From positions 124,001 through 188,000 of IMG/VR virus record IMGVR_UViG_3300045256_000050: DNA of 64,000 nt, one strand, 5' to 3'. Below are positions 40,656 to 64,000 of the stretch, piece by piece. The position numbers and the translations under genes are program-made. The number at the start of each line of letters is the position of its first letter. Positions within the stretch are counted from its first letter, which is position 1. The notes below the pieces were generated by a model that saw nothing but the letters and a program-made list of their open reading frames with translations, made no database searches and was not told the DNA's origin.

Positions 40656-40663
40656 CCTTCTCC

Positions 40664-42469: not shown

Positions 42470-42479
42470 TGATTATCTT

Positions 42480-44485: not shown

Positions 44486-45516
44486 TATGCCTCCAGCTTC
44501 ACGCCGAACTCGGCTGCGTTGATGTTCGTGCCCGTCCAGTCGATGTTGCCGTTCGGGTCTTTATCAAAGGCGTAACCGAAATAGCCGTAGACCGACTGAG
44601 TGGGACTGAGGACGCCGCTCGTGGCGTCCGACGCACTGGAGTGGGCCTGGAGTCTGATCTGCCGGGTGCCCGCAATCGTCTTTTCCGCCGAACACTCGAC
44701 CCACACGGCTTTGCCCGAGAGGCCGGTCGGCACGTTGGTCACGTCGTACAGGTCAACGTGCCCTGCGGTGCTGTCTTCAACGTAGTCGGTGTTACCGTTG
44801 GCGACGGCCGTCTCGTCTACGCACTGGTAGTTGCTCGCCGCACCGACGGGCGTCCACTGGTTCGTCGAGCCGTTGCCGATGGGGTTGCTGGTCAGAACCT
44901 TGATCGAGCCGAGGAAGTCGTTGTTGAAGCTCCCGGTGTTGTCTGCGATGTACCAGTCGTCGAACCAGCCGGGGAAGTTGTCGGCTGCCAGGGCGACCTT
45001 CGTCACGTTCGCAGAAGCCGCTTGCTGCGTGTTCACGTTGGTCAGGTTCAACACGGTCTGGCCGTTGACCTTGACCAGCACCGAGCCGGTGCTGCTGTTA
45101 ATCACTACCTTTGCCTCAACCCAGAACCAAGTCCCGTTGTTCGGGACGCCGATGGTCCCGATGCTTCCGAGTAGGGTGCCACCCGCCCTAGAAGCGAAGA
45201 AGTGGCCCGATTGCGTCAACGAGATAGTGAGTTGCAGTGTCGTGGCGTTATAGAAGTAGAGCAGGAAGCCGCTGCCGACGTTCTGCGTGTTCTGGTCGTC
45301 GATCTTGTAGGCGAAGCCGGTAATAACCGTGGGGGAAGCCAGGATGTTGTCCGGTGTGGTCAGAATGCGGTCGTCGGCGAAATAGCAGGACGTGCCGGTG
45401 CCGAGCCTGCCGGTCTGTCCGAACTGGAAGTTCGTGCCGTTAATCGTGTAGCCACGGGCCGTGAAGTCCGAGCTTTGCGTGTAGTTTTCAAAACCTTCAA
45501 CCCAGACGAGTGCCAT
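44485..45516 (-). CDS. LamG/ConA-like virion protein, array copy 1
   Basis: MALVWVEGFE...same motifs; GGAGG RBS. Confidence 0.7.
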   Translation of the reverse strand: MALVWVEGFENYTQSSDFTARGYTINGTNFQFGQTGRLGTGTSCYFADDRILTTPDNILASPTVITGFAYKIDDQNTQNVGSGFLLYFYNATTLQLTISLTQSGHFFASRAGGTLLGSIGTIGVPNNGTWFWVEAKVVINSSTGSVLVKVNGQTVLNLTNVNTQQAASANVTKVALAADNFPGWFDDWYIADNTGSFNNDFLGSIKVLTSNPIGNGSTNQWTPVGAASNYQCVDETAVANGNTDYVEDSTAGHVDLYDVTNVPTGLSGKAVWVECSAEKTIAGTRQIRLQAHSSASDATSGVLSPTQSVYGYFGYAFDKDPNGNIDWTGTNINAAEFGVKLEA

Positions 45517-46845: not shown

Positions 46846-48528
46846 CTACTTTCTGACCTTGATCGAATAGAGTTTCTTGCCCTGGAAGAACATGACTTGG
46901 GAGTCCCGAGCGGTCAAGATCATGTCGCCTTCCGTCACCGGATCGTCGATCTCTTTGACGCTCGGATGATCGACACGGAAAATCTCGACGTTTTCCTGCT
47001 CATTCATCAGCACGCCGATGCCCGTTGGAAGCCCTACGAAGTTCAGGGAGGGCACGGAAACGTCCGAGACGGTCCTGATCTCGTAGCTCCAGTCGGCAGC
47101 GAACCGCAGCGTGTGGCGAGCGTACTTGCCCGTCCGGTCCACGGTGATGATGCCCAACAGCCGGTTGTGGTAGCGGGCGTCCACCACCTGAAGCCCGTTA
47201 AGCTCCTTGATGGCGATCTGCCGGTTCTCCCGGCTGTTCGGGAAGATCGACGCAATCGTGGCGTCGAACAGGGTTTGGATCAAGCAGCCCTCGAAAACCT
47301 TCGTGGACTGTGGGATGTATGTCCCAACGACAGTGGTCCCGGCGAGAACTTTACTTCCCAGACCAGTGAAGGTAAGTTCCAGAACGTTCCCGCCGAGGAG
47401 GACGTACACCCGGTCGCCAGAGGTAAACACCTTCTCGGCGTTGCAGGTAATGGGAATCTTGTCGCCCGTCAGGATGTTCTGGATGTTCAGCGTGCCGTGA
47501 TCGGTCCACACGGCCAGCGGGGTAGCACCCAGGAATCCGATCTGGACGGGGTGTGCGAGTGCGACACGTCTGCCGTTCACATATGCGCATCCCTGGCACA
47601 GCACCACTTCCGTGCCCTGGCTGTAGCGGTAGCCGACGATCTCCTCGTCCAACTCCCGCAGCAGTTCGATGTCGAAGTTGTTGCTGCCCTTGATCGTCTT
47701 GACGGTCGTGATGACGGCGAGTTTGGCGACCAGATCGAACGGCGGCGGCACCCGCATCCCACGGTCCAGAACGGCCTCGTACCACTTCAGGTACACGTCT
47801 GGGATGACGGAGAGCGGCTGGCAGACGGCCTTCGGGTAGGTCACGTCGGGGTTGAGGACGGAGATGTTGGCCTTCATGCGGCCGTCCATCGCCGTGTTCT
47901 TGTCCGTGAACTTCGGGTGGTTCCCCTTGTAGGGGTGAATCCCGATGAACATCTGGAACGTGACGACGGCGAACGAGAACCAGTCCGTTCCTTCAGTGAA
48001 CTTGTTGTTACAGTGGCGGTCCCGGATGGACTCCATGATCGCCGTGGCCGGGTAGCTCGGCGTCTGGTACGAGTTCACGTCGATGAAGAACACGTTCTCA
48101 AGGGGAGCGTCCAGAAGGAAGTTCAACTCGTTCAGGTCTACGAGCAGAACCTTCTTCGAGTGGATGAAGCCGGTGGTCGCCTGCATCTGGCGGACCAGCT
48201 TCAGCACCATGTCCGGGGTGACGTTGTTCCGGGTGCGGAACGCCTTCGTGAACAACTGGCAGAGGGTGTAGGCGTCGGGCACGAGCTTCATCGTGTACCC
48301 GACATCGACGCCCTTCGTGTCCACGAGGATGTCTTCCGGCCGAATGATGTGCGGCTCGTCGAGGACGGCGAGTTCCTTGAACTTCTGCTCCGGGATCATC
48401 TTCCCCGGTTCGCAGACTTTGTAAACCACGCCGCCCTTCGAGTAAACCTCACCTTCCCCGCCTTTGGCGAGGAAGTTCCTCTTGTCGAGGTTCACTTCGA
48501 GACGCTTCCCCTTGAGAGTGAGCTTCAT
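46846..48528 (-). CDS. Ser/Thr protein kinase-like (TerY-P triad type) with C-terminal beta domain
   Basis: KGGEGEVY, VYK, HSKKVLLVDLNELN, FIDVNSYQ, DWFSFAV. Confidence 0.8.
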   Translation of the reverse strand: MKLTLKGKRLEVNLDKRNFLAKGGEGEVYSKGGVVYKVCEPGKMIPEQKFKELAVLDEPHIIRPEDILVDTKGVDVGYTMKLVPDAYTLCQLFTKAFRTRNNVTPDMVLKLVRQMQATTGFIHSKKVLLVDLNELNFLLDAPLENVFFIDVNSYQTPSYPATAIMESIRDRHCNNKFTEGTDWFSFAVVTFQMFIGIHPYKGNHPKFTDKNTAMDGRMKANISVLNPDVTYPKAVCQPLSVIPDVYLKWYEAVLDRGMRVPPPFDLVAKLAVITTVKTIKGSNNFDIELLRELDEEIVGYRYSQGTEVVLCQGCAYVNGRRVALAHPVQIGFLGATPLAVWTDHGTLNIQNILTGDKIPITCNAEKVFTSGDRVYVLLGGNVLELTFTGLGSKVLAGTTVVGTYIPQSTKVFEGCLIQTLFDATIASIFPNSRENRQIAIKELNGLQVVDARYHNRLLGIITVDRTGKYARHTLRFAADWSYEIRTVSDVSVPSLNFVGLPTGIGVLMNEQENVEIFRVDHPSVKEIDDPVTEGDMILTARDSQVMFFQGKKLYSIKVRK

Positions 48529-48540
48529 GTTGCCCTCGGG

Positions 48541-49026
48541 TTACTTGACTTCTTCCAGGGCCAGGATGCGGCTGCTGACCTGACGCCGCATCTTCCGGCT
48601 CATGGCTTCCACGTCCTTGTCCTTGAACTCGCCAGCCGTGGCGATCAGCTTGTCCAGGTCGGCTTCCAGCTTCTCCAGCATCCCGCCGACCGGACTCTCC
48701 GGGGGCGTGCCGGGGATGACCGTCGCCTGCTTGATGACCAGCTTCTTCTTCGGCTTTGGCCCCGGCTTCTTCTTGACCGGCTGAACCGTCCCCGTCGCCG
48801 CCGGGGTGCCGTGGGCGTGGGCCGGGCTGGCGAGCGGCTTGGCCTTCGCCTTCTTGTCCCGCCACGTCTTCCGGGCGTACTGGAAGAGTTGGTTGTTCGG
48901 CACGTCCATCCGGGTCGGGTGCTTCTCCTTGAACTGCCGCACCATCTCCTCGAAGGAGATGTTCTCGTTCTCCTCGAACATCTTGTGGATCAGAGCCGTC
49001 GCCGATTCTCGCTTCGTCGTGTCCAA
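48541..49026 (-). CDS. Basic hypothetical protein, possibly DNA-binding
   Basis: TTG start with GAGGG RBS; K/P-rich linker. Confidence 0.5.
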   Translation of the reverse strand: MDTTKRESATALIHKMFEENENISFEEMVRQFKEKHPTRMDVPNNQLFQYARKTWRDKKAKAKPLASPAHAHGTPAATGTVQPVKKKPGPKPKKKLVIKQATVIPGTPPESPVGGMLEKLEADLDKLIATAGEFKDKDVEAMSRKMRRQVSSRILALEEVK

Positions 49027-49036
49027 GATCGTGCCC

Positions 49037-49618
49037 TCAGTAGAGGTTGTTTGCCTGGACGTAGAGGTAAGTGTCGTGGAGGACAAGCTTGGCTGCCTCC
49101 GGGTCGTGTGCCTCGTACATCCGGCGGAAGTCAGAAGACGCCACTTGCAGGTTCGCACCGGCGAGGTACTTGTGGGGAGGGCGATGCCACCACTCGTTAC
49201 CACGGGTGTAACCGGCTCTGTCAAATACTACAAACGGCACCACGTCCAGTAAAGCAGGATAGCCAACCCACTTCTCGATTTTCAGGGCGTTGTCCATCCC
49301 GATCATCAGGTGGAATTGATACTGCGGATAAGCATCCCGCAGCAGTTCGTAGACCCCCATCGTCGGGAGTTGAAGCTGGTGCTTGATCTCGAAGTCGCTG
49401 GCTTTGGCCCACGGGCCGAGATGATCCACCATCAGTTCGCACATGCGAAGCCGATGGAACGGGTCAGACATGACCTTGCCGAACATGTGCTTGTAGCAGG
49501 GCATCACCCACACTTCGTCGAAGTGCGGGCGAGCCAGACACATGAGTTGCTGGTGTCCGATAGTCGGCGGGTCGGCTGCCGTGCCTAGAACTGCGACCGT
49601 CCTGGTCTTATCCGTCAT
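49037..49618 (-). CDS. nadD: Nicotinate-nucleotide adenylyltransferase
   Basis: DPPTIGH, DEVWVMP, LMIGMDN, VASSDFR. Confidence 0.85.
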   Translation of the reverse strand: MTDKTRTVAVLGTAADPPTIGHQQLMCLARPHFDEVWVMPCYKHMFGKVMSDPFHRLRMCELMVDHLGPWAKASDFEIKHQLQLPTMGVYELLRDAYPQYQFHLMIGMDNALKIEKWVGYPALLDVVPFVVFDRAGYTRGNEWWHRPPHKYLAGANLQVASSDFRRMYEAHDPEAAKLVLHDTYLYVQANNLY

Positions 49619-50414
49619 ATACCACTCCTATTCCGAAGTCATCTTCGTTGATGTAGTTGTATTCCTTGAACTTCTCGAACGCCTTGTGGCAACGCCTGCG
49701 AACGAACGTCCCAGCGTAACCCTTGAAAGCCATCACTTCGTTCAGGATGGAGTCGATCTCCACCGTGTTCTTCGTGATCGAGGTTGCGTTCTTCACCTTC
49801 TCGGTGAAGTGGCTCAGCCCGTCGGTGATGAGGGCCACCATGTCGTACTCGGCACGGGAGAAGGAGAACGCCCATCCGCTCAACCCGTACTCGATACCCA
49901 TCTCGTTGACACTCACGTCGTCGTCAATGGTCGTGACGACGAACTTCCCCCAGCCGAGCTTCTTCAGGTACTCCTCCCGGTCGCCGGGGGTGAAGCCGTA
50001 CTTCAAGTAGTACGGTCCGCCCGACGTGAACTCGACGGTCACGACCTGGAGTTTGCCGCTGCGGTGACGGGCGATGATGTTGCCGTCACCGTACAGGCAC
50101 CCGCCGAAGTTCGGATCGTTCTTCCTCATCGTCACCCACCCCAGAGTCGCCAGGAGCGAGTTCGGATCGAGTTCCAGACCGTGCCGGTGCAGGTCTGCGG
50201 CCTTGAACACCGCTTCACCGATTACACCCCCGGTCCGCTTCAGCGAGAGTTCGGCGGACTTCGCCAGCAACCGTGCGCCCCAATCCGTGTCCGGGGCCGA
50301 GGAACAGCCGTCGCAGATCACTGCGTAGGCCATGTCCTCAGTCAAACCCGACAGGGCGTAGTCCTGGCAGACTGCGTGCGTCGAACCGATGGTGTAGAAG
50401 GCGTCGGCGTTCAT
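49608..50414 (-). CDS. PP2C-family protein phosphatase
   Basis: GSTHAVCQDY, ICDGCSS, ITDGL, EDD. Confidence 0.8.
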   Translation of the reverse strand: MNADAFYTIGSTHAVCQDYALSGLTEDMAYAVICDGCSSAPDTDWGARLLAKSAELSLKRTGGVIGEAVFKAADLHRHGLELDPNSLLATLGWVTMRKNDPNFGGCLYGDGNIIARHRSGKLQVVTVEFTSGGPYYLKYGFTPGDREEYLKKLGWGKFVVTTIDDDVSVNEMGIEYGLSGWAFSFSRAEYDMVALITDGLSHFTEKVKNATSITKNTVEIDSILNEVMAFKGYAGTFVRRRCHKAFEKFKEYNYINEDDFGIGVVYDG

Positions 50415-52462
50415 TCAGGAACTCCAGAGAGCCACAGTGCGGGTAACACGTCAGACGGGGCACGCCAGTCGCCCCGTGGCGACAGGCCGACAGAACCGAC
50501 CTTCGGGCCGTCCGGGACACAGTTCCGCTTGAACTGGTTCTGAACGAACCGAGCCAGGAACGTCCGCAGGGCGTTCTTCTTCTCGCCCTCGGTGTAGTCT
50601 ATCGAGAACTTCGCCTTCGTCATGAGGTAGGCGATCTTCTCCGGCGGGAACTGGTTCCGCAGGAAGTTGAACAGGATGAAGTCGTGGAGTTCATACGCCC
50701 CCAGGACGCTCTCCGTCTTCTGGACGTGCTGGCCGTCCTTACCCACCGGCAGAAGTTCCGGGGATACAGGCGTTGCCACGATATCGTAGAGGACGCTGGC
50801 GAGCTTGTCCCGCTTCTCGTTACCGCCCTCTATCACGAAGTCGTCGATGCACTCGTCGGCGATGTACTTGACCACGAACTTCACGAGCGTCTTCGGCACG
50901 GTGCAGTTCGGGTTGTAGTTGCTCATGTGGTCGCCGTTGTAGGTACACCACCCCAGAGCCGCCTCCGAGAGATCACCCGTACCGACCACGAACCCCTTCG
51001 AGAAGAGTAACAGGGTCCGCAGACGGGCCTGGACGTTCTCGAACGTCAGGTCTTTCAGTTCTTCGGCGGGCGTCTCTTCGATGAGCTTGTTGATCCACTG
51101 GAACATCCCGTAGCCGTAAGGCTGTTCCTGACCGAATGGGGCATGACGGATCAGCGTCATCACGTCGCTGGTCAGGTGCGTGATCGGCATCGTGGACTGC
51201 GTGATGCCCAGCAGACGCATCAGTTCCAGGGCGTTCCCCTTCGTCCGCTCGGTCGTACCGAACCCCGGCATCGTTGCCCCGTGGATTCGGGTGTGCGGGA
51301 TGCCCAACTCGTCGCAGGCACGGACCACCGCCAGCAGGGCCAGCGTGGAGTCCAGGCCACCGGAGACGCCGATGACAAGCGGCGTACTCGGCTGGAGTTG
51401 TTCGATCCGCCTGCACAGACCGTGCGTCTGAATGCCGAAGATGTCCGAGCAGCGGGCCTGAAGCGTGGTCGGGTCACTCGGCACGAACGGGGCTGGGGCG
51501 ACGTACCGCAGCAGGTCCGTCCTGGGCGTCTCCGTGACCTGGAACCAGACCGGGATGTGGCGGTACTGGTGGTAGTCGTGCCGCCTCGACTGAGTGAAGG
51601 TGTTGGACTTCGCCCGGTCGTTGTTGAGCTTCATCAAGTCCACGTCGGCACGGGCGTAGGCGACTTCCTTGTACTTCAGCCCCTTGCCGACCCGCTTGGA
51701 CTCGTTGAGCAGGTTGCCGTTCTCGGCGATGATGCAGTGCCCGCCGAACACGACATCGCTGCTGCTTTCGGTGGAACCGGCCGAAGAGTAGGCGTAAGCC
51801 GCCACGCACCGGGCCGACTGGTTCTTCACCAAGTCCATCCGGTACTCGCTCTTGGCGACGAGTTCGTTGCTGGCCGAGAGGTTGACGAGAATTTGCGCCC
51901 CGTGGATGGCGGCGTGGGAGGAAGGCGGGATGGGCATCCACATGTCTTCGCAGATTTCGGCGAAGATGCGGACATCGTGGCCCGGCCGTCGGTCGTCGGC
52001 GAACATCAGGTCCGGGCCGAACGGGATGACCCCGCCTGCGAAGTAGACTTCGGTCGGACAGTTCGCATTCCAGGGCGAGAAGTGACGGCCCTCGTAGAAC
52101 TCGCCGTAGTTCGGCATGTACGTCTTCGGGACGATGCCGATGAGCTTCCGGTCTTGGAACGCCAGGGCACAGTTGTAAAGCGCACCTTCCACCCGGACCG
52201 GACAGCCCACGAAGACGAGGGGCGTGGTCGGCAGGTGCTTCCAGAGTTCGATGACGGCCTGTTCGGCGGCGTCGATCAGGTGCTTGTGGCCGAAGTAGTC
52301 GCCGCAGGTGTAGCCGGTGACGGCGAGTTCGGGAAAGACGATCAGGTCGGCGTCGGCTTGGGCCTGTGCCGCTTCGATGATGGATTTGGCGTTCATCGCC
52401 GGGTCGGTGACGTAGACCCTGGGCGAAACGGCCGCAATGCGGAAAAAGCCGAACTTGTCCAT
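50411..52462 (-). CDS. nadE: Glutamine-dependent NAD+ synthetase
   Basis: Nitrilase triad FPEL / PKTY / EICED plus SGGLDST, ENVQARLR, GTGDLSE. Confidence 0.95.
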   Translation of the reverse strand: MDKFGFFRIAAVSPRVYVTDPAMNAKSIIEAAQAQADADLIVFPELAVTGYTCGDYFGHKHLIDAAEQAVIELWKHLPTTPLVFVGCPVRVEGALYNCALAFQDRKLIGIVPKTYMPNYGEFYEGRHFSPWNANCPTEVYFAGGVIPFGPDLMFADDRRPGHDVRIFAEICEDMWMPIPPSSHAAIHGAQILVNLSASNELVAKSEYRMDLVKNQSARCVAAYAYSSAGSTESSSDVVFGGHCIIAENGNLLNESKRVGKGLKYKEVAYARADVDLMKLNNDRAKSNTFTQSRRHDYHQYRHIPVWFQVTETPRTDLLRYVAPAPFVPSDPTTLQARCSDIFGIQTHGLCRRIEQLQPSTPLVIGVSGGLDSTLALLAVVRACDELGIPHTRIHGATMPGFGTTERTKGNALELMRLLGITQSTMPITHLTSDVMTLIRHAPFGQEQPYGYGMFQWINKLIEETPAEELKDLTFENVQARLRTLLLFSKGFVVGTGDLSEAALGWCTYNGDHMSNYNPNCTVPKTLVKFVVKYIADECIDDFVIEGGNEKRDKLASVLYDIVATPVSPELLPVGKDGQHVQKTESVLGAYELHDFILFNFLRNQFPPEKIAYLMTKAKFSIDYTEGEKKNALRTFLARFVQNQFKRNCVPDGPKVGSVGLSPRGDWRAPSDVLPALWLSGVPE

Positions 52463-52508
52463 GATGTCCTCCTTGACACTAGGATACCGTTGGGAGCGTA
52501 GTTGTAAA

Positions 52509-53276
52509 TCAGGGCAGGGTCAAAATCTCCACGCCTTTCTCAGTAACGAGAACCGTGTGTTCGTACTGAGCGGATAGCTTACCGTCCGCCGTCCGAGCCG
52601 TCCAATTGTCGGCGTCGATCCGACAGTGCGGCGTACCGGCGTTAATCATCGGTTCGATGGTGAAGATCATACCCGGCTTCATGACCGGGCCGTGATTCTT
52701 CTTTGTCATGTAGTGATTGACTTCCGGGGCTTCGTGGAATTTCAACCCGACCCCGTGACCGGCGAAGTTGTACACGACGGAGTGGCCGTGAGTCAGTGCG
52801 TACTTGGTGATGGCGAAACCGATGTTGCCGAAGTAGTTACCCGGTCGGACTTCCTTAATGCCGACTTCCAGGCACTTCTTGGCGACTTCCATTACCTGAG
52901 CGGCGTGACGGCTGATCGGCCCGACGGCGAACATCGTGGACGTGTCGCCGAAGTAGCCGTCGAGGATCGTGGACACGTCCACGTTCACGATGTCACCTTC
53001 CTTCAGAATGGTTGTCTCTGAAGGAATGCCGTGGCAGATGACTTCGTTGATGGAGATGCAGCACTCCTTCGGGTAGCCACGGTAGTTGAGCGTGGCCGGA
53101 GTGCCGCCGTGATCCTGCGTGAACTGGATGACGAGTTGGTTAATCGCCTCCGTGCTGACGCCTGGAACAACGTGTGGCCGGATGAAATCGAGGGTTTGGG
53201 CCGTCAGCTTACATGCTTTTCGGATACCCTCGATCTGCTCCGGCGTTTTGATGATGATTTCTTCTGTTACGGTCAT
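52509..53276 (-). CDS. map: Methionine aminopeptidase type I
   Basis: CISINEVICHGIP, GDIVNVD, GYFGDTS, GHGVG, FTIEPMIN, SAQYEHT. Confidence 0.95.
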   Translation of the reverse strand: MTVTEEIIIKTPEQIEGIRKACKLTAQTLDFIRPHVVPGVSTEAINQLVIQFTQDHGGTPATLNYRGYPKECCISINEVICHGIPSETTILKEGDIVNVDVSTILDGYFGDTSTMFAVGPISRHAAQVMEVAKKCLEVGIKEVRPGNYFGNIGFAITKYALTHGHSVVYNFAGHGVGLKFHEAPEVNHYMTKKNHGPVMKPGMIFTIEPMINAGTPHCRIDADNWTARTADGKLSAQYEHTVLVTEKGVEILTLP

Positions 53277-53302
53277 TGTGCCTTCCCTGGCATAATGTAG
53301 TC

Positions 53303-54535
53303 TTACAAGTCTCTCTTTAGGCCAAGCCGCTTGGCGAATGTCCATTTCGCCACCTTGACGGCTTCGGGGTCGCCGGTCGCCTTCGTGTCCACGTCGCTGA
53401 TCTTCACCACCGGCATCCCGTTGACGGTCGCCAGCTTCATGACGATATTCATCGCCTTCGTGCCGCCGAAGGGAACGAAGTCGTTGGTGAAGTTCGTCCC
53501 GATCCCCGCTCCGACGGACTTGAAGCAGTTCTTGTAGAGATCGTACAGTTCGACCGCCTGCCCGGCGTTCAGGCCGTCGCTGAACGTGATCCCCTTCGTC
53601 TTGGGGTCGATCCCCAGCTTGCGGTAGTGGCTGAGAATCTTGTTGGCGAACGCCCGTGGGCAGCCGCTATCCTGCCGCACGGCGTCGTACTCATTTGCCA
53701 AGTGCTTGTCGAAGTCCAGCAGGAACACGTCCGTGCCGAACGTGTCAGGCAGGGCGAGCTTCGGCAAGCCGAGCGGCAGGTGCTTCAGCCACAGGTTGAG
53801 GGCGTGCTTGTTGGCGTGGCTCAGCCCTTCGAGGGCTGAGACGCCCATGTACCACTCGTGGGCGACGGTGCCCAGCGGGGCCATGTTGTACTTCTTGGCG
53901 AGGTAGACGTTGCTCGTGCCGAGGCAGTTGTTGTGCTTCTTGAACTCGGCGACCACGGCGTCCTGAATCTCGAAGCTCCGACGACGACGGGTGCCGAACT
54001 CAGAGAACTTGCACTCGCCCATGAACGTCGCCTTCGCCCCCTGGGCGGCGGCGTAACCGGCGACCAGCGATCCGGTCTTTCGCTTCAGGTTGGTCGTTTC
54101 GGCGGCGAAGGTCAACTCGCTGACGAGGGCGAGTAGTGGAACTTCCCACATGATCGCCGTCTTCCACGGGCCGGACACGGTGATCTTCAGGTTGCCCTGC
54201 GGGTCTTCACCAATGGCAACCTCTTCCGGGTTGTAGAAGAAGTTTTGGAGGAAGTCGATGTAGTTCCTCGGGAAGCCGAGGTTGGAGAGGTAGGCGAGTT
54301 CGTGGTCTTCCAACTTCAGCTTCGCCATGCTCTTGATGGCCTGCTGGAGCTTGTAAGGGATGACGCCGTGCTTGAAGCCGTCGGGCCGGGTGCTGCCCCG
54401 GTCGATGAACTTGTACGTCACCTGGGCGTCCGGGTATTCCTGAAAGACGGCGTTGCCCATCAGGAACTTGTACCAGTCGTTGTCCAAGATGGACGGGATG
54501 ATCTTGCATTCCGGGTCGATGTATTCCGTTGTCAT
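53303..54535 (-). CDS. pncB: Nicotinate phosphoribosyltransferase
   Basis: DNDWYK, EFGTRRR, GTSNV, GTVAHEW, RQDSG, FSDGL, GIGTN (PncB-type, not NAMPT-type). Confidence 0.9.
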   Translation of the reverse strand: MTTEYIDPECKIIPSILDNDWYKFLMGNAVFQEYPDAQVTYKFIDRGSTRPDGFKHGVIPYKLQQAIKSMAKLKLEDHELAYLSNLGFPRNYIDFLQNFFYNPEEVAIGEDPQGNLKITVSGPWKTAIMWEVPLLALVSELTFAAETTNLKRKTGSLVAGYAAAQGAKATFMGECKFSEFGTRRRRSFEIQDAVVAEFKKHNNCLGTSNVYLAKKYNMAPLGTVAHEWYMGVSALEGLSHANKHALNLWLKHLPLGLPKLALPDTFGTDVFLLDFDKHLANEYDAVRQDSGCPRAFANKILSHYRKLGIDPKTKGITFSDGLNAGQAVELYDLYKNCFKSVGAGIGTNFTNDFVPFGGTKAMNIVMKLATVNGMPVVKISDVDTKATGDPEAVKVAKWTFAKRLGLKRDL

Positions 54536-54632
54536 GGCTTTCTCCTCTTGTTATCCCATGATACCATCTTCGGGCAAAAAAGTAAGCCGTGGATTTCTCC
54601 ACGGCTTGCGCTTTCCTGGTTAAGACCCCGTG

Positions 54633-55427
54633 TTAGAACACGAGGCTCTGGCTCGGCCCCTTCGTGCCGAGCGCCTGGGACTGGCTGCTGATCGACTGGC
54701 TGACGAACTTCGCCAGCTTCGCCAGGGTCTTCTCGCTGGCGTCGTTCAGCGACAGGTAGGGGACTTCCGTCTCCTTCCCGCTGGCGTCCTTGACCTTGAC
54801 CGGGGTGAACCCGGCCTTCTGGGCGAACTCGGTCAGGTAGGCGTGCAGCCGGGGGTCGTTGACGTTCACCCCGATCAGGATCGCCACCAGGGACTCCATC
54901 GCCTCGGACTGCACCGCCTCCTTCAGCGCCTCGCCGACGTTGACCGCCGTGAGCAGCGAGGCGTTGTCGTCACCGTCGGTGATGACGAACACGATCCCGT
55001 TGCACAGGAAGTCGTTGGCCGACAGTTGCTTGGCGTAGGCGTTCGACGCCTTGATGGCGTTGTGGCTGCTGTCGAACAGGGCGGTCGTCGCCCCGTTGCC
55101 GGACTTCCCGTAGAAGCCCTGGTAGTCGGCCACGTTGCAGTTTTCGAGCAGCTTGAACCCGTGGAACTCGCTCATCTTCGTGCCGAACACGACGGTGCGG
55201 AGCATCAGGTTGTCGGCACGGGGGCTGTGGCGGCAGGACTTCACGATCTCCTGCGTGGCCTTCTCCATCTCCCCGGCGAACCCGGCCGTCGAACCGGACT
55301 CGTCGAACACGACGGTCGCCAGGGTGTACTCGGTCGCCTGGAGATCGCCGATCTTCGCAGCGGAGAATCCGTAGTGCGAGTTCGGGATGTTGAAGTTCTC
55401 CAGGTCGTCGTCGCCTACGAGGGGCAT
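54633..55427 (-). CDS. von Willebrand factor A protein, TerY-like
   Basis: MIDAS DESGS...TALFD...VITDGDDN. Confidence 0.8.
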   Translation of the reverse strand: MPLVGDDDLENFNIPNSHYGFSAAKIGDLQATEYTLATVVFDESGSTAGFAGEMEKATQEIVKSCRHSPRADNLMLRTVVFGTKMSEFHGFKLLENCNVADYQGFYGKSGNGATTALFDSSHNAIKASNAYAKQLSANDFLCNGIVFVITDGDDNASLLTAVNVGEALKEAVQSEAMESLVAILIGVNVNDPRLHAYLTEFAQKAGFTPVKVKDASGKETEVPYLSLNDASEKTLAKLAKFVSQSISSQSQALGTKGPSQSLVF

Positions 55428-55456
55428 GGTATTCTCCTGTGTCTTGTTTGAGTGAA

Positions 55457-55475
55457 GGGGCGGGTTTCCCGCCCC
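55457..55475. terminator. GC hairpin between pncA and the vWA gene
   Basis: GGGGCGGG-TTT-CCCGCCCC; no clear U-tract. Confidence 0.4.
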
Positions 55476-55487
55476 GTGGGTGTTGGG

Positions 55488-56291
55488 TTACGCCAGGAAG
55501 TCCGTCGTGGTCGTGGTCTTCATGCCACGGGCCACCATCTCCTTGATGAAGTCGTCCTGGTTCTTCTCGAACCCAGGGACCGGCGACGTGGCGTCGGTCA
55601 GCAGGACGAGCTTCTTCACGAAGCTGTCGTCCGGGAAGTAGTTCACCATGTCCCGGCCGGTGTTGGCGAGGCAGTGGCTCCCGGCCTCCCCGGCGAGCAG
55701 CACGATGTCCGCCTCGTTCACGGTCTGGAGGAACCCGGTGTTGATCTGGGTGCCTGGGTCGCTCGGGTCCGGCACGTCGGCCTGGATCGCCGAGTAGTGT
55801 TCGGTCAGGATGTTGCTGCCCTTCGTCACGAAGTCGATGCTGCCGAACCGCTGGTTCGACCAGTCCATCAGCTTCTCGTACAGGGCGGGCCAGACCCCGT
55901 GCCCCCACGACCCGATCAGGCAGTGCGGGGGCCAGATGCACAGCGGGTAGCGGCTGTTCTTCTCCAGCCCCTCGACGTAGGCGAGCGCCCGCTTGTACAG
56001 GCCCGGCTTGCTGGTCGTCCACGTCCCGTTCCGCACGTCGGCAGCGGAGATGATCGTGAACGGGTTCGGGTGCTGCCCGGCCGAGTTCTTCCAGAAGACC
56101 GGGTGGGCGATGTGGATCGCTTGGTGGCTGTCGAGGGTGACGTGGATGTCGTGCAGCTTGTCCCGCAGCCGCCCGACCATCGTCGCCAGCCGGTTCATGT
56201 CCTTGTCGGACCCGTTGACGTAGAGTGCCCCCTTCGGGTCGCAGAAGTCGTTCTGCGGGTCGATCACGATCAGGTGTGCCTTGTTCGCCAT
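55488..56291 (-). CDS. pncA: Nicotinamidase (isochorismatase family)
   Basis: IDPQNDF, LDSH, WPPHC, TKG, GEAGSHC (D-K-C triad). Confidence 0.85.
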   Translation of the reverse strand: MANKAHLIVIDPQNDFCDPKGALYVNGSDKDMNRLATMVGRLRDKLHDIHVTLDSHQAIHIAHPVFWKNSAGQHPNPFTIISAADVRNGTWTTSKPGLYKRALAYVEGLEKNSRYPLCIWPPHCLIGSWGHGVWPALYEKLMDWSNQRFGSIDFVTKGSNILTEHYSAIQADVPDPSDPGTQINTGFLQTVNEADIVLLAGEAGSHCLANTGRDMVNYFPDDSFVKKLVLLTDATSPVPGFEKNQDDFIKEMVARGMKTTTTTDFLA

Positions 56292-56330
56292 GTCAGCCTC
56301 CGGTAAAGGTTCGGTCTGTTCACCAGGATT

Positions 56331-56945
56331 TTACAGTGGTGCTTCGGGTTGTAAAGCAGCTTTTTCAGCCGCCTCACGCATCGCCAGGATCACGGGTTGC
56401 AGGTCCGCCCACACGTCGGCCTTCGCTGCGGGCGTCCTCAACAAATACGAGGGGTGGTAGGTGCAAATGACCCGCTTCCCCTTGTATTCGTGTTCACCAC
56501 GCAAACTACCCATCGACCGTTCCTCTGGCTTGCCCAGCAGGTAGATCGATGCCGTCTTGCCGAGACAGATGATCCACTTGGGGTCAACGACCTTGATCTG
56601 GAGATCGAGGAACGGGCGGCAGTTGGCCGCTTCTTCCTTCGTGGGCGTCCGGTTGAACGGAGGGCGGCACTTGAGGATGTTGCAGATGAAGATGTGTTCC
56701 CGCTTCCACCCTGCGGCGGCGATGAGCTTGTCGAGAAGCTGACCGGCTTTACCGACGAAAGGTCGCCCGGACCACGCCTCGTCCTCTCCCGGAGCTTCAC
56801 CGAGGATAAGGATGTCGGCGTTCGGGTGGCCCTCGCCGGGGACGTATTTGTACTCGAAGTGATTCCGGTACTCCGAAAGACCACTGCACTTGTTACATGC
56901 AGTGATCTTGGTGTTGATGACTTCTAACGCTTGCGACTTGAGCAT
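56331..56945 (-). CDS. udg: Uracil-DNA glycosylase family 4 (Fe-S type)
   Basis: CNKC, GEAPG, GRPFVGKAG, NILKCRPP, TYHPS. Confidence 0.9.
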   Translation of the reverse strand: MLKSQALEVINTKITACNKCSGLSEYRNHFEYKYVPGEGHPNADILILGEAPGEDEAWSGRPFVGKAGQLLDKLIAAAGWKREHIFICNILKCRPPFNRTPTKEEAANCRPFLDLQIKVVDPKWIICLGKTASIYLLGKPEERSMGSLRGEHEYKGKRVICTYHPSYLLRTPAAKADVWADLQPVILAMREAAEKAALQPEAPL

Positions 56946-56952
56946 CCTGCCC

Positions 56953-57168
56953 TCAATCCTGGTAGTCCTTGTCGAAGTCGGGCTTTTTGCCCTCGTTCCA
57001 CCAGTAGGTGTTTTTCTGGTCGTCTTCGGTCTTGGCGTTCGTTGTCTTCACCAACTTGTTCAGACAGAGACAGCCGACGATGACGGTTCCCAGAATCCCG
57101 CAGACGATCCCCATCCAGAAGTCCGGCGAGTTCATGACCCCGCCGGACCCGTAGGTTGCGAACAGCAT
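56953..57168 (-). CDS. Small single-pass membrane protein
   Basis: FWMGIVCGILGTVIVGCLCL. Confidence 0.5.
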   Translation of the reverse strand: MLFATYGSGGVMNSPDFWMGIVCGILGTVIVGCLCLNKLVKTTNAKTEDDQKNTYWWNEGKKPDFDKDYQD

Positions 57169-57169
57169 C

Positions 57170-57777
57170 TCACTCCTCCTGAGTAACTGGTTCCGACTCC
57201 GTTTTGAGAACCGGGGTGGCCCCCTCGAACATTACCTCTTCCCGGTTGGCGATCCGCTTGAGCGGCGGGATGTCCAACGCCACCACTTCCTGACGGGTGA
57301 TGGTGAGGTTCGGGTTCTTCCGGGCGGCGTGCATCGGCGGGAGCTTGTCCAACTCCTCGGTGCTGAACGGCCGCTCGGTCTTCCGTCGAGCGAGGTAGGT
57401 GCCCCGCTTGAAGAAGTCCGGGTAGTTGTTCCAGTTGACCCCGTGGGTCTGGAACATCATCTCCTGCATCATGCTGCTCGACTTGTTCTGCAACTCCTTG
57501 TGCGAGAACATCGACTGAGCCGCCATGCTGACGCTGTTCCGGGTGGCATCCATCTCCCGCCAGATCAGGTAGTTGGTCGCCTCCCAATCCGTCGGCACGT
57601 TGTACACCCGTGCGTCGAACAGGGGCATCCGGTCGGCCTTCTCTGGGAGGTAGTCCTTCAGGTTGCGGTTGAAAAACGCCGTGGTCATCGACGCCAACAC
57701 GGAAGTCATCTTCAACAACTTGGCGTCGAAGAAGTGTTCGGCGTCGATCTCGTCGGAGTACCACACGAGCGAGATTT
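57170..57777 (-). CDS. thg1: tRNA-His guanylyltransferase (Thg1-like), exon 2
   Basis: EISLVWY...KMTSVLAS...FDARV...YLIWREMDATRNS...FKRGT. Confidence 0.85.
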
Positions 57778-60136
57778 GTCGGGTAAGGGCGGAACATCGC
57801 TGCCCGCCCTCCCCTAAGAACCGTGCGTGTAAGTTTCCCTTCACACGGCTCAAGCAATCGGCTTAGCCACCAATCACGCCTTCTTCCCGTGCTTTGCCAG
57901 ATGGCAGTACAAGTGAAGAATGCGGAGGTTTGCGAGGCTGTCGTCCCCACCTTCCGAACGAGGCTTCACATGATGCTCATGTAACTCCTCGCCGTTGTTG
58001 AGGCTTTCGCCGCACTCAGGACACAAGAAGTTCTGTTGTTTGGCGACCTGACGCTTCTTGACAGTCAAGAGGTCGGACGCCTTTTCAGCGTCCCGCTCCT
58101 CCCAATACTGTTCAAGGGCGGGGTCGTCCCAGCAGGCGAACCGCTGGACAACAACGTGCCTCTTGATGAGAACCCAAGAAGGTTTCATCATGTAGCATTC
58201 GGACGTGCCGAACACCCATTTTGCACCCTTCCGGTAGTTCCCCCAATACCGCTTCAGCCACCCCCAACTCTTGTTGGCGTGACGCCGCCTGACCCAACGG
58301 TATTGCAGTTGGACCAGATAGTTGTCGAGGCCGTCAAAAGTTCGGGACGCCACCGAGCATCGGAAGTAGTTGCACCACCCACGGATGATCGGGTTCACTC
58401 TGGAGATCAGTTCTTCCAAAGGTCGCCCGTCATACTTGCGGAAGGTTTCCTTCAGCTTCTGCTTGATGGCCTTCACGGACTTCTTGCTGGGCTTGATGAA
58501 GAGCTTGTCGCCCTTCTTCGAGGTCAGCGTCTTGTACCTCCTGATGTTGAACCCAAGGAAGTCGAAACCTTCGTCCAGATGGGTGATACGGGTCTTTTCC
58601 TCAGAGAGTTCCAGACCACGTTCCTTCAACCAGACAACTAGCTTCGCCCGAATTGCTTCGGCTTCCTCCTTGGAGTGACACAACACCACGAAGTCGTCGG
58701 CGTACCTGACCAGCCCAACCGAGTTCGGAGCCAGTTCGTAGGTGGTCTTCCCGGTCCCCTTGCGGGTGTTTTTCCGGTACTTGACGCCCAGAACCTCCTC
58801 CATTCCGTGAAGAGCGATATTCGCCAACAAGGGACTAATCACTCCACCTTGCGGCGTACCCGCATGGGTGTCGTGGTAGCTGCCGTCGAATTCGACGTAA
58901 CCCGCCTTCAGCCATTGCCGGATCAATTCCCTTGCGGGAAAATTCCCGATCAACTGCATCAGCTTGTCGTGGTCGATGTTGTCGAAGGCTCCCTTGATGT
59001 CAGCGTCCAGCACCCACAATTTCCCACCTTGGCTGGTGAGTTTGAAGATGCGAGCGATGGCATCTTGGCAAGAGCGTTTCGGTCGGAAACCGTAGGACGA
59101 GTCCTCGAACTTCGCTTCCCAGAACGGTTCCAGTGCGTTAAGCACCATCGCCTGAACAGCACGGTTCGTGATGTCAGGGATGCCCAAAGGACGGAGCTTG
59201 CCGTTGGCTTTCGGTATATAAATCCGTCGTGCGGGACACTTCTTGGCGAGTTGGTATTCAGCCAACTCGTCCACGAGGCGTCCCCTTGCTTCGGGGGTTT
59301 TGACAACGATCTTGTCCACCCCCGGCGTCGTCCTCCCTTTGTTCAACTGCGTCACCCGTCGAACCGCCAGACAGCGGTTCTCGTAGCTCCGCAGCATAAC
59401 ATGCTGAAGACTTCGCACCCTCTTGAGGTTTCCCTCTTTGGCGGCACGGAAAATCTCTTGGCGAAGGCGGCGTACAAAAGTGACGACGTGGGACCAGTCA
59501 ATGCTGTTCCAGTCGCACTTTTGCTGGGAACTTACGCTTTGCTTTTCGTTCTCCATTTATCCCTCCTTCCCTTGAAATCTTCCGTCCGATCACCTGTCGG
59601 AATTCAGCACCCTTTCGGGTCGGGCATTACCCTATCCAGCCGGTTATGGATTCCCGTTGCCTTTCGGCTGCTGGCATTCGCTTGATCCGACATCCTTTAC
59701 CTGCTGGGGAGTCCAGTGTTGCTCACGCTTCACTTGCTTTCGGGCCGAAACCTTCAAGACCCCAACAGGCTTAACACGTTCCGCAGAACCGAAGGTACGA
59801 CTGCCGTAGGTAGTTCCTATACGCCGGGGATCGGAGGGGTGTTACTGGCCGTTGCCAGACGAAGACAGCCAGCCCTTCTGTGATCCCAGATAACCCGGCG
59901 TCAATTGCATTGCCGAGCCTACTCATCACGACGCTTCAAATGGAACTTCGCTTTCGCTTACCGTAGCAGTCTTTCCCCCGCCCCGGCTTTCTCCCGCAAT
60001 TTGGGTACTCGCCGTTGGGCATTCTTGCTCCCAGCTTCACACGCCTCCGTTGCCAGAGACGCATGTGGGATGGGGAAAAGGTTTAACACAAACCTTGGAG
60101 TTACCTCCACTTCAGTTCAGCGACCTCGTGTCGCAC
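57778..60136 (-). mobile_element. Group II intron (IIB, probably chloroplast-like class) inserted in thg1
   Basis: 5' end GTGCG at 60136; domain V GAGCCGTGTGAAGGGAAACTTACACGCACGGTTC at 57851-57818; 3' end ...TACCCGAC at 57778; excision restores the frame. Confidence 0.92.
57874..59556 (-). CDS. ltrA: Intron-encoded reverse transcriptase/maturase with HNH endonuclease domain
   Basis: TPGVD, LRPLGIP, PQGGVISPLLAN, RYADD, RGWCNYF, CPEC...HHVKPRSEGG...N...H..CH. Confidence 0.95.
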   Translation of the reverse strand: MENEKQSVSSQQKCDWNSIDWSHVVTFVRRLRQEIFRAAKEGNLKRVRSLQHVMLRSYENRCLAVRRVTQLNKGRTTPGVDKIVVKTPEARGRLVDELAEYQLAKKCPARRIYIPKANGKLRPLGIPDITNRAVQAMVLNALEPFWEAKFEDSSYGFRPKRSCQDAIARIFKLTSQGGKLWVLDADIKGAFDNIDHDKLMQLIGNFPARELIRQWLKAGYVEFDGSYHDTHAGTPQGGVISPLLANIALHGMEEVLGVKYRKNTRKGTGKTTYELAPNSVGLVRYADDFVVLCHSKEEAEAIRAKLVVWLKERGLELSEEKTRITHLDEGFDFLGFNIRRYKTLTSKKGDKLFIKPSKKSVKAIKQKLKETFRKYDGRPLEELISRVNPIIRGWCNYFRCSVASRTFDGLDNYLVQLQYRWVRRRHANKSWGWLKRYWGNYRKGAKWVFGTSECYMMKPSWVLIKRHVVVQRFACWDDPALEQYWEERDAEKASDLLTVKKRQVAKQQNFLCPECGESLNNGEELHEHHVKPRSEGGDDSLANLRILHLYCHLAKHGKKA

Positions 60137-60368
60137 CGTCGCTCTGGGTGTAACCGACCCGTGCGTTCGTCTCTTGGACGAGGAACTTGGTGGTCGCCAC
60201 CATGAGCCGGGACAGCCGCTCGTCGAACGGCCGCTTCAGACCCGCAGTGAAGGTGTGGAACGCCTTGCCGTCCATCCGGGCCACGATGGGAATGAGCGGA
60301 AGGAGTTGTTGGCCTGAGTATTGGAACTCGTAGCCCTTCATGCGGTCGCCGAGACTGTCCTTCTTCAT
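60137..60368 (-). CDS. thg1: Thg1-like protein, exon 1
   Basis: LGDRMKGYE...ARMDGKAFHTFT...RPFD...YTQSD. Confidence 0.88.
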
Positions 60369-60393
60369 GTCTTCTCCCTGTTTCAGTTCGATC

Positions 60394-60422
60394 AGTCTAC
60401 CTCGGAGTTTTCCCGCTGTAAA
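60394..60422 (-). promoter_or_regulatory. Early-type promoter of thg1
   Basis: TTTACA-17 nt-TAGACT. Confidence 0.55.
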
Positions 60423-60481
60423 CCACTTCTGTCCTAAAATTGCGTCCGAAATGCCAGTACATACGGGTGGAGGAACTACCC

Positions 60482-62592: not shown

Positions 62593-62593
62593 C

Positions 62594-62821: not shown

Positions 62822-62836
62822 CCTTGCCGCTCCTTC

Positions 62837-63934: not shown

Positions 63935-64000
63935 CGTGCCCTCCTTTCGGCAGTAAGACACTGCCCAGGAGGGCAGGTTCACATCTTGAAGGAATCGCCC

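What the first reader, a model, noticed from the sequence alone, without database searches (positions are those of the whole stretch)
46846..56291. Phage operon with a complete four-step Preiss-Handler NAD+ reconstitution pathway interleaved with a vWA-PP2C-kinase triad
Seen: one minus-strand run pncA - vWA - pncB - map - nadE - PP2C - nadD - basic protein - kinase. nadE/PP2C share an ATGA overlap and PP2C/nadD overlap by 11 nt, so the two gene sets are translationally coupled, not just adjacent. Established: PncA, PncB, NadD and Gln-dependent NadE turn nicotinamide into NAD+. Nicotinamide is what SIR2/TIR-type NADase defences release, and the described phage counter-pathways NARP1 (Adps+Namat) and NARP2 (Nampt+Nmnat) use different enzymes. 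Inference: this is a third, deamidating NAD+ reconstitution route, possibly switched by phosphorylation through the embedded triad.
Basis: partly seen in the sequence, partly recalled or inferred. Interest (0 to 1): 0.88.

Follow-up and report, generated by a model that had tools for sequence, protein, structure and literature searches.

The report
Nicotinamidase phospho-switch cassette with NAD genes
A huge uncultured phage carries all four enzymes that turn nicotinamide back into NAD+, but the conserved unit is an undescribed four-gene cassette (nicotinamidase, vWA protein, PP2C phosphatase, kinase) that also sits in many bacterial chromosomes and that this phage has filled with extra NAD genes.

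Summary
The gene run is real. Nine minus-strand genes lie at 46846-56291, with the stated ATGA and 11-nt overlaps. PncB, Gln-dependent NadE, Map and PP2C pass curated HMM cut-offs. NadD, the nicotinamidase, the vWA protein and the kinase are divergent, but motifs, PDB profile hits or AlphaFold/Foldseek support them.

The interpretation needs re-centring. A survey of 160 related loci shows an invariant four-gene order: nicotinamidase, vWA, PP2C, kinase with a beta-propeller. It is present in 65 of 77 informative viral contigs (mostly 30-485 kb) and 21 of 49 bacterial loci, including complete Armatimonadota chromosomes. PncB, NadE and NadD are variable additions placed between or around these genes. 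All four enzymes lie near the cassette on only 8 of 80 viral loci, two of them being the window's own contigs.

So the triad is not embedded in an NAD operon. NAD genes were recruited into a nicotinamidase phospho-switch cassette of bacterial type.

Phage Preiss-Handler clusters (pncB-nadD-nadE) were already reported in jumbo phages in 2024, and "NARP3" now names PnuC+NadR. I found no description of the four-gene cassette. Its function, probably regulated nicotinamide recycling during NAD+ depletion, is inferred and untested.

The parts
55488..56291 (-). Divergent nicotinamidase (PncA-like, 267 aa) with an extra segment of about 50 aa. First gene of the conserved cassette.
   Evidence: Family alignment A1: IDPQxDFC (D11), DSH (D54, H56), WPPHC (H123), TKG (K157) and SHC (C207) are invariant. 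Profile against the PDB: yeast Pnc1 2h0r E 1.4e-6, Mtb PncA 3pl1. AF2 pLDDT 81.9, and the top 11 Foldseek PDB hits are nicotinamidases. HMM hits alone fall below the cut-offs.
54633..55427 (-). TerY/YegL-like vWA protein (264 aa) with a complete MIDAS motif and a conserved Ser-rich C-terminal tail.
   Evidence: D42-x-S44-x-S46, T115 and D151 are invariant or nearly so in 19 relatives. The tail is FVSxSISSQSQALG, with S243, S245 and S250 invariant. JGI names relatives 'YegL'. Of 19 relatives, 7 hit VWA_2 and 6 hit VWA. The window protein has no Pfam hit and the family profile has no PDB hit by sequence.
54584..54607 (-). Terminator-like hairpin (10-bp stem followed by a T run) between vWA and pncB.
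   Evidence: Consensus scan. The region is not enriched in such sites over shuffles, so this is a lead only.
53303..54535 (-). PncB, nicotinate phosphoribosyltransferase (410 aa).
   Evidence: TIGR01514 384 bits (cut-off 269.55), NF003704 392.8 bits (cut-off 379), and Pfam NAPRTase plus NAPRTase_N.
52509..53345 (-). Type I methionine aminopeptidase. The start is probably ATG 53276. It is a passenger gene seen only in this phage sub-lineage.
   Evidence: TIGR00500 311 bits. RBS GGAAGG lies before ATG 53276. Found at this position only in the window's own contigs (L087/L088), L094 and L003.
50411..52462 (-). Glutamine-dependent NAD+ synthetase NadE (683 aa).
   Evidence: NF002730 747.7 bits (cut-off 473) over the full length, with CN_hydrolase and NAD_synthase domains.
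49608..50414 (-). PP2C-family phosphatase (268 aa). Third gene of the conserved cassette.
   Evidence: PF13672 PP2C_2 38.6 bits (cut-off 24). D18, D35-G36, D110-G111, D198-G199 and D258-D259 are invariant in 18 relatives. ATGA overlap with nadE.
49037..49618 (-). NadD-like nicotinate-mononucleotide adenylyltransferase (193 aa).
   Evidence: TIGR00482 81.7 bits, below the 112 cut-off. Best PDB hits are all NadD, full length. TIGH and SSDFRR motifs are present. 11-nt overlap with PP2C.
48541..49026 (-). Lys/Pro-rich basic protein (about 161 aa) of unknown function. It is an insertion specific to this phage.
   Evidence: No hit in Pfam, NCBIfam, PADLOC or PHROGs. Among 166 loci, homologues occur only in the window's own contigs.
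46846..48528 (-). Protein-kinase-fold enzyme (residues 1-255) fused to a C-terminal beta-propeller-like domain (residues 285-560). Fourth gene of the conserved cassette.
   Evidence: GGEG loop; K37, D131, N136 and D150 are invariant, as are DWFS and GIHPYKG. Profile against the PDB: CDPK, Nek2 and NleH kinases. AF2 pLDDT 88.1. Foldseek: LRRK2 (kinase plus WD40), AMPK, CDK2 and IRAK4, plus the propellers Hsv2, Nup133 and PALB2.
56328..56355 (-). Sigma-70-like promoter match (10 of 12) upstream of the nicotinamidase gene.
   Evidence: Consensus scan. Four sites found against 2.3 +/- 1.7 expected, so this is a lead only.

Best explanation
The functional core is a four-gene cassette that bacteria and huge phages share. 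It has a fixed order:
1. a metal-dependent nicotinamidase;
2. a TerY/YegL-like vWA protein with an intact MIDAS site and a Ser-rich tail;
3. a PP2C phosphatase;
4. a protein kinase fused to a beta-propeller.

I read it as a phosphorylation switch. The propeller would sense a signal. The kinase and PP2C would set the phosphorylation state of the vWA tail, or of the nicotinamidase itself. The vWA protein would then bind or release the nicotinamidase. The net effect is to gate the first step of nicotinamide recycling.

In this phage lineage pncB, map, nadE, nadD and a small basic ORF were inserted between the cassette genes. The phage therefore carries a self-contained route: nicotinamide to nicotinate to NaMN to NaAD to NAD+, consuming PRPP, ATP and glutamine. 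The most likely use is to keep NAD+ available during infection, including when host NADase defences cleave it to nicotinamide and ADP-ribose.

Shown: the genes, their intact catalytic motifs, the conserved order, the distribution, and the repeated recruitment of NAD genes. Inferred: who phosphorylates what, the signal that is sensed, and the counter-defence role.
For: Cassette order and spread. The order is PncA-vWA-PP2C-Kin on one strand in 65 of 77 viral loci and 21 of 49 bacterial loci with at least 5 kb of downstream sequence. Eight more bacterial loci show PncA-vWA-Kin. The order is never permuted. The bacterial cassettes are compact, with a median span of 4.3 kb.

Truly chromosomal. In a 4.38-Mb Capsulimonadaceae chromosome the cassette plus PncB sits beside ilvC, leuA and leuB.

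Link to NAD. PncB lies within 10 kb in 37 of 160 loci, NadE in 22 and NadD in 11. These genes appear in at least five different arrangements, some flanking a compact cassette (L145, L139, L164, L134) and some interleaved (window, L091, L147, L003). The NadE of L003 occupies the same slot but is only 25% identical to the window's, which indicates non-orthologous replacement. Several triad-less loci pair this nicotinamidase directly with PncB. No other gene family recurs around the cassette.

Active sites. They are intact in all four cassette proteins.

Tight packing. Overlaps of 4 and 11 nt in the window, and of 8 and 4 nt in L003.
Against: There are no experimental data of any kind.

In LR756511-like phages and several others the four genes are spread over 7-10 kb with many small ORFs between them. 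Translational coupling is therefore not required.

Twelve loci lack the triad, so the nicotinamidase can work without it.

The only residue that tracks triad presence is Thr156, next to the catalytic Lys157 (104 of 114 linked copies against 3 of 12 triad-less). This is not significant once phylogeny is taken into account (5 independent pairs, median p 0.25).

The vWA and PP2C proteins do not match PADLOC's models of known and candidate defence systems, where TerY-P models would be expected. The analogy to that triad is therefore architectural only.

The substrate of the nicotinamidase is inferred from fold and motifs. Its extra segment and unusually high conservation (50-75% identity across phyla) could reflect a different amide substrate.
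Confidence: 0.5

Rival explanations
1. Nicotinamide clearance rather than NAD+ rebuilding. The regulated nicotinamidase removes nicotinamide, which inhibits Sir2-type, ART and PARP enzymes as their product. This keeps phage or bacterial NAD+-consuming enzymes active, as Pnc1 does for Sir2 in yeast. PncB, NadD and NadE merely dispose of the nicotinate.
For: Most viral loci (43 of 77) carry the cassette with no NAD gene in the 10 kb downstream, so the nicotinamidase step alone is what is conserved. A PARP/WGR gene lies near the cassette in L006. T4-like phages are known to use ADP-ribosyltransferases (my own knowledge).
Against: PncB, NadE and NadD were recruited repeatedly, and NadE was replaced by a non-orthologous gene at the same slot. 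That points to selection for the whole route to NAD+. No NAD+-consuming enzyme recurs near the cassette.
Confidence: 0.15
2. The cassette is a TerY-P-type conflict system. The triad senses infection, or a competing phage, and switches on the nicotinamidase as an effector. This removes nicotinamide so that rival phages cannot rebuild NAD+ through NARP1 or NARP2.
For: The vWA + PP2C + kinase architecture equals the TerY-P triad, and stand-alone versions of that triad defend against phage (Gao 2020, as cited in PMC11090510). One bacterial locus sits beside restriction-modification-like and UvrD/PDDEXK genes. NARP1 and NARP2 both need nicotinamide.
Against: PADLOC gives no hit for the vWA or PP2C proteins. 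The kinase carries a beta-propeller, not the OB fold or zinc ribbon of the described triads. In L005 the cassette sits among housekeeping genes. Its linkage to PncB, NadD and NadE, which rebuild NAD+, is the opposite of what a depletion effector would need.
Confidence: 0.1
3. There is no functional coupling. The triad acts on unrelated host or phage targets. The nicotinamidase and the other NAD genes are ordinary auxiliary metabolic genes that sit in the same early-gene region, and the shared order is inherited synteny.
For: In many huge phages unrelated ORFs separate the four genes. Map and the basic ORF show that this region accepts insertions. The T156 association is not significant.
Against: The same four genes occur in the same order and tightly packed in distantly related bacterial phyla and in phages. 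The nicotinamidase tree interleaves bacterial and viral sequences (17 label changes, at least 6 forced by supported branches). Inherited synteny alone cannot explain this. No other family is conserved alongside the cassette.
Confidence: 0.15

Closest known systems
Preiss-Handler clusters of 'NAD-jumbo phages' (pncB-nadD-nadE, e.g. Kuafu_71; Microbiome 2024, PMC11662467)
   Same: Phage-encoded, clustered PncB, NadD and NadE on very large phage genomes, proposed to supply NAD+ and possibly to counter NAD+ depletion.
   Different: That paper describes three genes starting from nicotinate. It mentions phage pncA only in passing and does not mention a vWA, PP2C or kinase partner. Here a nicotinamidase heads the cluster, and the NAD genes are additions to a four-gene cassette.
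NARP1 (Adps+Namat), NARP2 (Nampt+Nmnat) and NARP3 (PnuC+NadR) phage NAD+ reconstitution pathways
   Same: Phage genes that rebuild NAD+ from its breakdown products or precursors, shown to overcome NADase defences.
   Different: The enzymes and chemistry differ: a deamidating four-step route through nicotinate and NaAD that needs glutamine, with an attached phospho-signalling triad. There is no experimental evidence for it here. The Osterman preprint does not mention nicotinamidase, PncA or NadE.
TerY-P triad (TerY-like vWA + PP2C + Ser/Thr kinase; Anantharaman 2012; defence system of Gao 2020) and E. coli YegL/YegK/YegI
   Same: The same three domain types in one operon. JGI names relatives of the vWA protein 'YegL'. 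The MIDAS motif is intact. [quoted passage not shown]
   Different: PADLOC gives no hit for the vWA or PP2C proteins. The kinase carries a C-terminal beta-propeller instead of an OB fold or zinc ribbon. A nicotinamidase is the constant fourth partner. The cassette is common in lytic huge phages.
Canonical bacterial PncA-PncB nicotinamide salvage
   Same: The catalytic Asp-Lys-Cys and the metal-binding Asp-His-His of nicotinamidases are conserved. Some loci show direct PncA-PncB adjacency.
   Different: The protein is about 50 aa longer and falls below the curated PncA HMM cut-offs (30 bits against 174). It is far more conserved than its partners, and it is usually followed by the triad.

Membership tests
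Deamidating (PncA + Preiss-Handler) NAD+ salvage pathway | Nicotinamidase with catalytic Asp-Lys-Cys and an Asp-His-His metal site | tested here: met
   D11, K157, C207 and D54, H56, H123 are invariant. These segments align to Pnc1 and Mtb PncA. Foldseek's top 11 hits are nicotinamidases. Curated HMM cut-offs are not reached.
Deamidating (PncA + Preiss-Handler) NAD+ salvage pathway | Nicotinate (not nicotinamide) phosphoribosyltransferase | tested here: met
   TIGR01514 384 bits and NF003704 392.8 bits, both above their cut-offs. No NAMPT family is among the hits.
Deamidating (PncA + Preiss-Handler) NAD+ salvage pathway | NaMN adenylyltransferase (NadD) | tested here: inconclusive
   Best family is TIGR00482 at 81.7 bits, below the 112 cut-off. 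All the best PDB hits are NadD. (T/H)xGH and SxxxxR-type motifs are present. Preference for NaMN over NMN cannot be read from the sequence.
Deamidating (PncA + Preiss-Handler) NAD+ salvage pathway | NAD+ synthetase with a glutaminase domain | tested here: met
   NF002730 747.7 bits (cut-off 473), with CN_hydrolase and NAD_synthase domains.
Deamidating (PncA + Preiss-Handler) NAD+ salvage pathway | NAD+ is formed from nicotinamide | not testable with these tools
   Needs enzyme assays.
TerY-P triad / TerY-P defence system | vWA (MIDAS) + PP2C + Ser/Thr kinase encoded together | tested here: met
   All three are present and co-directional, with intact motifs. The order is conserved in 86 of 126 informative loci.
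TerY-P triad / TerY-P defence system | Sequence membership in the defence-system models (PADLOC) | tested here: not met
   No PADLOC hit for the vWA or PP2C proteins. The kinase gives only weak hits to mad6 and PD-T4-6.
TerY-P triad / TerY-P defence system | Kinase fused to a C-terminal OB fold (defence type) or zinc ribbon (CoCoNuT type) | tested here: not met
   The C-terminal 275 residues are all-beta and match propellers (Hsv2, Nup133, PALB2, LRRK2 WD40). The definition of the feature comes from PMC11090510.
TerY-P triad / TerY-P defence system | Protects against phage | not testable with these tools
   Needs infection assays.
Phage NAD+ reconstitution pathways (NARP) | Restores NAD+ and rescues the phage from NADase defence | not testable with these tools
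   No cultured phage in the INPHARED collection carries the cassette.
Eukaryote-like protein kinase superfamily | Gly-rich loop, catalytic Lys, catalytic Asp..Asn, Mg-binding Asp, kinase fold | tested here: met
   GGEG, K37, D131, N136 and D150 are invariant. Foldseek probability is 1.0 to many kinases. Pfam Pkinase scores 27.6 bits, below the 31.7 cut-off. The catalytic loop reads D-L-N-E-x-N, not HRD-L-K-x-x-N.

The most novel reading that the evidence does not exclude
Nicotinamidase-vWA-PP2C-kinase(beta-propeller) is an undescribed, ancient NAD+-conflict module exchanged between bacteria and huge phages. Its triad senses NAD+ breakdown or infection and gates nicotinamide recycling by phosphorylation. 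Candidate phosphorylation sites are the Ser-rich vWA tail and Thr156 beside the catalytic lysine. Huge phages that add PncB, NadD and NadE to it own a regulated, host-independent fourth kind of NAD+ reconstitution pathway against Sir2/TIR-type defences.
Probability: 0.3. Interest if true: 0.85.

Novelty: new variant of a known kind. Interest (0 to 1): 0.66.

Why it matters
NAD+ depletion is a major theme in bacterial immunity, and phage routes that rebuild NAD+ are being found one after another. The enzyme route in this window was already noted in jumbo phages, so it is not the new point.

What is new is that the nicotinamide-removing step is nearly always wired to a vWA-phosphatase-kinase switch. 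The same wiring is found in at least 564 loci from bacterial species genomes (one from an archaeal MAG) and at least 217 viral contigs.

If the switch controls the enzyme, this would be the first known case of post-translational control of NAD+ salvage in prokaryotes and phages. It would give a TerY-P-like triad a defined metabolic output. It would also explain why huge phages keep this cassette.

The idea can be tested directly with a few recombinant proteins and laboratory E. coli strains.

Tried and rejected
- Near-identity DNA search of the operon against GenBank phages found nothing. tblastn of NadE and PncB found only relatives at 44% identity or less.
- PADLOC gave no TerY-P membership.
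- Sequence-profile searches of the vWA and PP2C families against the PDB gave no useful hit. For these two I rely on motifs and Pfam.
- An apparent vWA-PP2C fusion protein of 612 aa in L006 would have been Rosetta-stone evidence. I rejected it because the two halves of the vWA gene lie in different reading frames, so it is probably a frameshift artefact.
- I looked for nicotinamidase residues that track presence of the triad. Only Thr156 stood out, and the phylogenetically independent-pairs test is not significant.
- I looked for a fifth conserved neighbour. There is none beyond PncB, NadE and NadD. The other large clusters are antisense shadow ORFs.
- Literature searches combining vWA or TerY, PP2C and nicotinamidase, and searches for NARP4 or 'phage nicotinamidase', found no description of the cassette. 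The virus NAD+ survey PMC9503650 does not mention it.
- I could not read de Souza & Aravind 2012 (one search failed) and did not look up Anantharaman 2012, so prior mention there is not excluded.
- The 'PncA-like' gp275 of phage G did not match the window nicotinamidase at E <= 1e-5 in tblastn.
- The sigma-70 promoter and terminator scan is not enriched over shuffles.

Full report
**What is in the window.** The 64-kb window is part of a very large T4-like myovirus. It encodes a Gp23-type major capsid protein (1114-2559), a tail sheath (21689-24064), a gp15-like sheath stabiliser and a baseplate hub. Its capsid protein is 75% identical to that of the 595-kb uncultured phage LR756511. The region is 100% identical to IMG/VR contig 3300045256_000050 of 244,986 bp. 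No tRNA genes are present.

Nine co-directional minus-strand ORFs fill 46846-56291.
- PncB, NadE, Map and PP2C pass curated HMM cut-offs.
- NadD is below its cut-off, but it aligns over its full length to solved NadD structures and has the nucleotidyltransferase motifs.
- The nicotinamidase is only faintly seen by HMMs. An alignment of relatives has every catalytic and metal-binding residue of nicotinamidases invariant. Its profile finds Pnc1 and Mtb PncA first in the PDB. Its AlphaFold model (pLDDT 81.9) has nicotinamidases as its 11 best structural matches.
- The vWA protein has no Pfam hit itself. Its family has an invariant MIDAS motif, several members hit VWA models, and JGI calls relatives YegL.
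- The kinase has an invariant Gly loop, Lys, Asp..Asn and Mg-binding Asp. Its confident model (pLDDT 88.1) is a kinase domain followed by a beta-propeller, and its best structural match is LRRK2, itself a kinase with a WD40 propeller.
- I read the ATGA overlap (nadE/PP2C) and the 11-nt overlap (PP2C/nadD) directly from the sequence.
- Corrections: Map most likely starts at 53276 and does not overlap pncB. The basic ORF most likely starts at 49026. A terminator-like hairpin lies between vWA and pncB.

**What changes the picture.** The nicotinamidase has thousands of close relatives at 50-75% identity, and so does the vWA protein. The two often sit on the same contigs.

Looking up the contigs showed the run nicotinamidase, 247-aa vWA protein, PP2C, 552-aa kinase, NAPRTase in a 4.38-Mb Capsulimonadaceae chromosome, next to ilvC, leuA and leuB. 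A similar set occurs in a 1-Mb contig.

I then scanned two collections with the nicotinamidase alignment. In GTDB species genomes at least 564 loci encode a relative, from Armatimonadota, Acidobacteriota, Myxococcota, Desulfobacterales, Rhodoferax, Planctomycetota and others. In IMG/VR 217 loci do, many on contigs of 200-485 kb.

**The survey.** I took the 160 loci fetched from those two scans and located all window proteins with tblastn and iterated HMM searches.
- The order nicotinamidase, vWA, PP2C, kinase on one strand is found in 65 of 77 viral loci and 21 of 49 bacterial loci that have enough downstream sequence. Eight more bacterial loci lack only PP2C.
- The order is never permuted.
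- Bacterial cassettes are compact, with a median of 4.3 kb from first start to last stop.
- No other gene family recurs around the cassette.
- PncB is near it in 37 loci, NadE in 22 and NadD in 11; Map is near it in 3.
- All four NAD enzymes lie within 10 kb on 8 of the 80 viral loci, two of which (L087, L088) are the window's own contigs. The layouts differ: some flank a compact cassette (L145, L139, L164, L134) and some are interleaved with it (window, L091, L147). The Logan contig L003, which is not among the 80, is also interleaved.
- In L003, the closest relative with the window's layout, NadE occupies the same slot but is only 25% identical to the window's.
- Some triad-less loci, including Armatimonadota ones, have nicotinamidase directly followed by PncB.
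- The nicotinamidase tree interleaves viral and bacterial sequences, with 17 label changes, at least 6 of them forced by supported branches.

**Reading.** The comparative data show the reverse. A nicotinamidase-plus-triad cassette is the conserved unit. It has moved repeatedly between bacteria and huge phages. In some phages it has attracted the remaining enzymes of the route to NAD+.

This repeated, differently arranged recruitment is good contextual evidence that the cassette works in nicotinamide and NAD+ metabolism. So are the direct nicotinamidase-PncB pairs. Both also support the view that the 267-aa enzyme really makes nicotinate.

The triad has the architecture of the TerY-P triad, which has been proposed as a metal-sensing phosphorylation switch. 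Stand-alone versions of that triad defend against phage (PMC11090510). The window's triad is not a sequence member of that family, and its kinase has a different C-terminal domain.

My best mechanism has four inferred steps:
1. The propeller senses a signal.
2. The kinase and PP2C set the phosphorylation state of the vWA protein's invariant Ser-rich tail, or of the nicotinamidase.
3. The MIDAS-bearing vWA protein binds or releases the nicotinamidase.
4. Nicotinamide recycling is thereby gated.

One residue hints at direct control. Thr156, next to the catalytic Lys157, is kept in 104 of 114 triad-linked copies but in only 3 of 12 triad-less ones. With 5 independent contrasts this is not significant.

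**Comparison with the literature.**
- NARP1 and NARP2 use other enzymes.
- NARP3 is PnuC plus NadR.
- Complete Preiss-Handler clusters (pncB, nadD, nadE) in jumbo phages were reported in 2024 and linked to NAD+ supply. A 2026 phage paper lists pncB, nadD and nadE as auxiliary genes that may counter NAD+ depletion.

The enzyme route as such is therefore already known at the bioinformatic level, although nobody has tested it.

I found no paper that links a nicotinamidase to a vWA-PP2C-kinase triad. Two older comparative-genomics papers were not read: one look-up failed and the other was not attempted.

No cultured phage in the GenBank phage collection carries this nicotinamidase family. Only four uncultured records do.

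**Verdict.** The thing worth following is the four-gene cassette and its repeated association with NAD+ synthesis genes, not the claim of a new 'third' pathway. The function is inferred from context and intact active sites only.

Noticed in passing
window 57170-60368 (minus strand): A group II intron splits a Thg1-like (tRNA-His guanylyltransferase family) gene. The intron is marked by Rfam D1-D4 at 60097-60019, domain V/VI at 57853-57778, and an RT-maturase-HNH ORF at 57874-59556. Exon 1 is about 60368-60117 and exon 2 about 57775-57170. The related phage contig L003 has the gene uninterrupted (271 aa).
   Followed up: partly
window 56331-63982 (minus strand); L003 5724-9957: A conserved block lies upstream of the cassette: RNA ligase, NUDIX hydrolase, Thg1-like gene and a UDG-superfamily protein. 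It looks like an RNA/tRNA repair and nucleotide-housekeeping island adjoining the NAD genes. L167 even has the RNA ligase inserted between the nicotinamidase and vWA genes.
   Followed up: partly
window 39633-45516 (minus strand): Four tandem paralogues (332-353 aa) of PHROG family 2448, function unknown, lie just downstream of the operon. A 601-aa ORF with no useful hit sits among them at 40664-42469.
   Followed up: no
L003 14591-16381 compared with window 50411-52462: The NadE of the closest syntenic relative is 596 aa and only 25% identical to the window's 683-aa NadE, yet it sits at the same position. This suggests non-orthologous replacement.
   Followed up: partly
window 55824-55826 (Thr156 codon of the nicotinamidase): Thr156, next to the catalytic Lys157, is conserved in 91% of triad-linked copies and 25% of triad-less copies. 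It is a candidate regulatory phosphorylation site, but the association is not significant after phylogenetic correction.
   Followed up: yes
window 54633-54710 (C-terminal tail of the vWA protein): The tail FVSxSISSQSQALGTxGPSQSL is highly conserved and Ser/Gln-rich, with three invariant serines. It is a plausible target of the kinase and PP2C.
   Followed up: partly
window 14236-17727 (plus strand): An 1163-aa ORF in the structural-gene region has no Pfam or PHROG match at all.
   Followed up: no
window 36013-37053 (plus strand): This ORF combines a phosphoheptose-isomerase-like N-terminal part (PHROG 1238) with a class I SAM methyltransferase C-terminal part.
   Followed up: no
L006 10914-12752: A gene was called here as a 612-aa vWA-PP2C fusion. 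The two halves of the vWA part lie in different reading frames, so it is probably an assembly frameshift and not a real fusion.
   Followed up: yes
L054 (contig binned as a Promethearchaeota MAG, 31 kb): The full cassette lies on a contig binned as Asgard archaeon. Its nicotinamidase groups with viral sequences (L104, L138), so the contig may be a mis-binned phage or a virus of that host.
   Followed up: no
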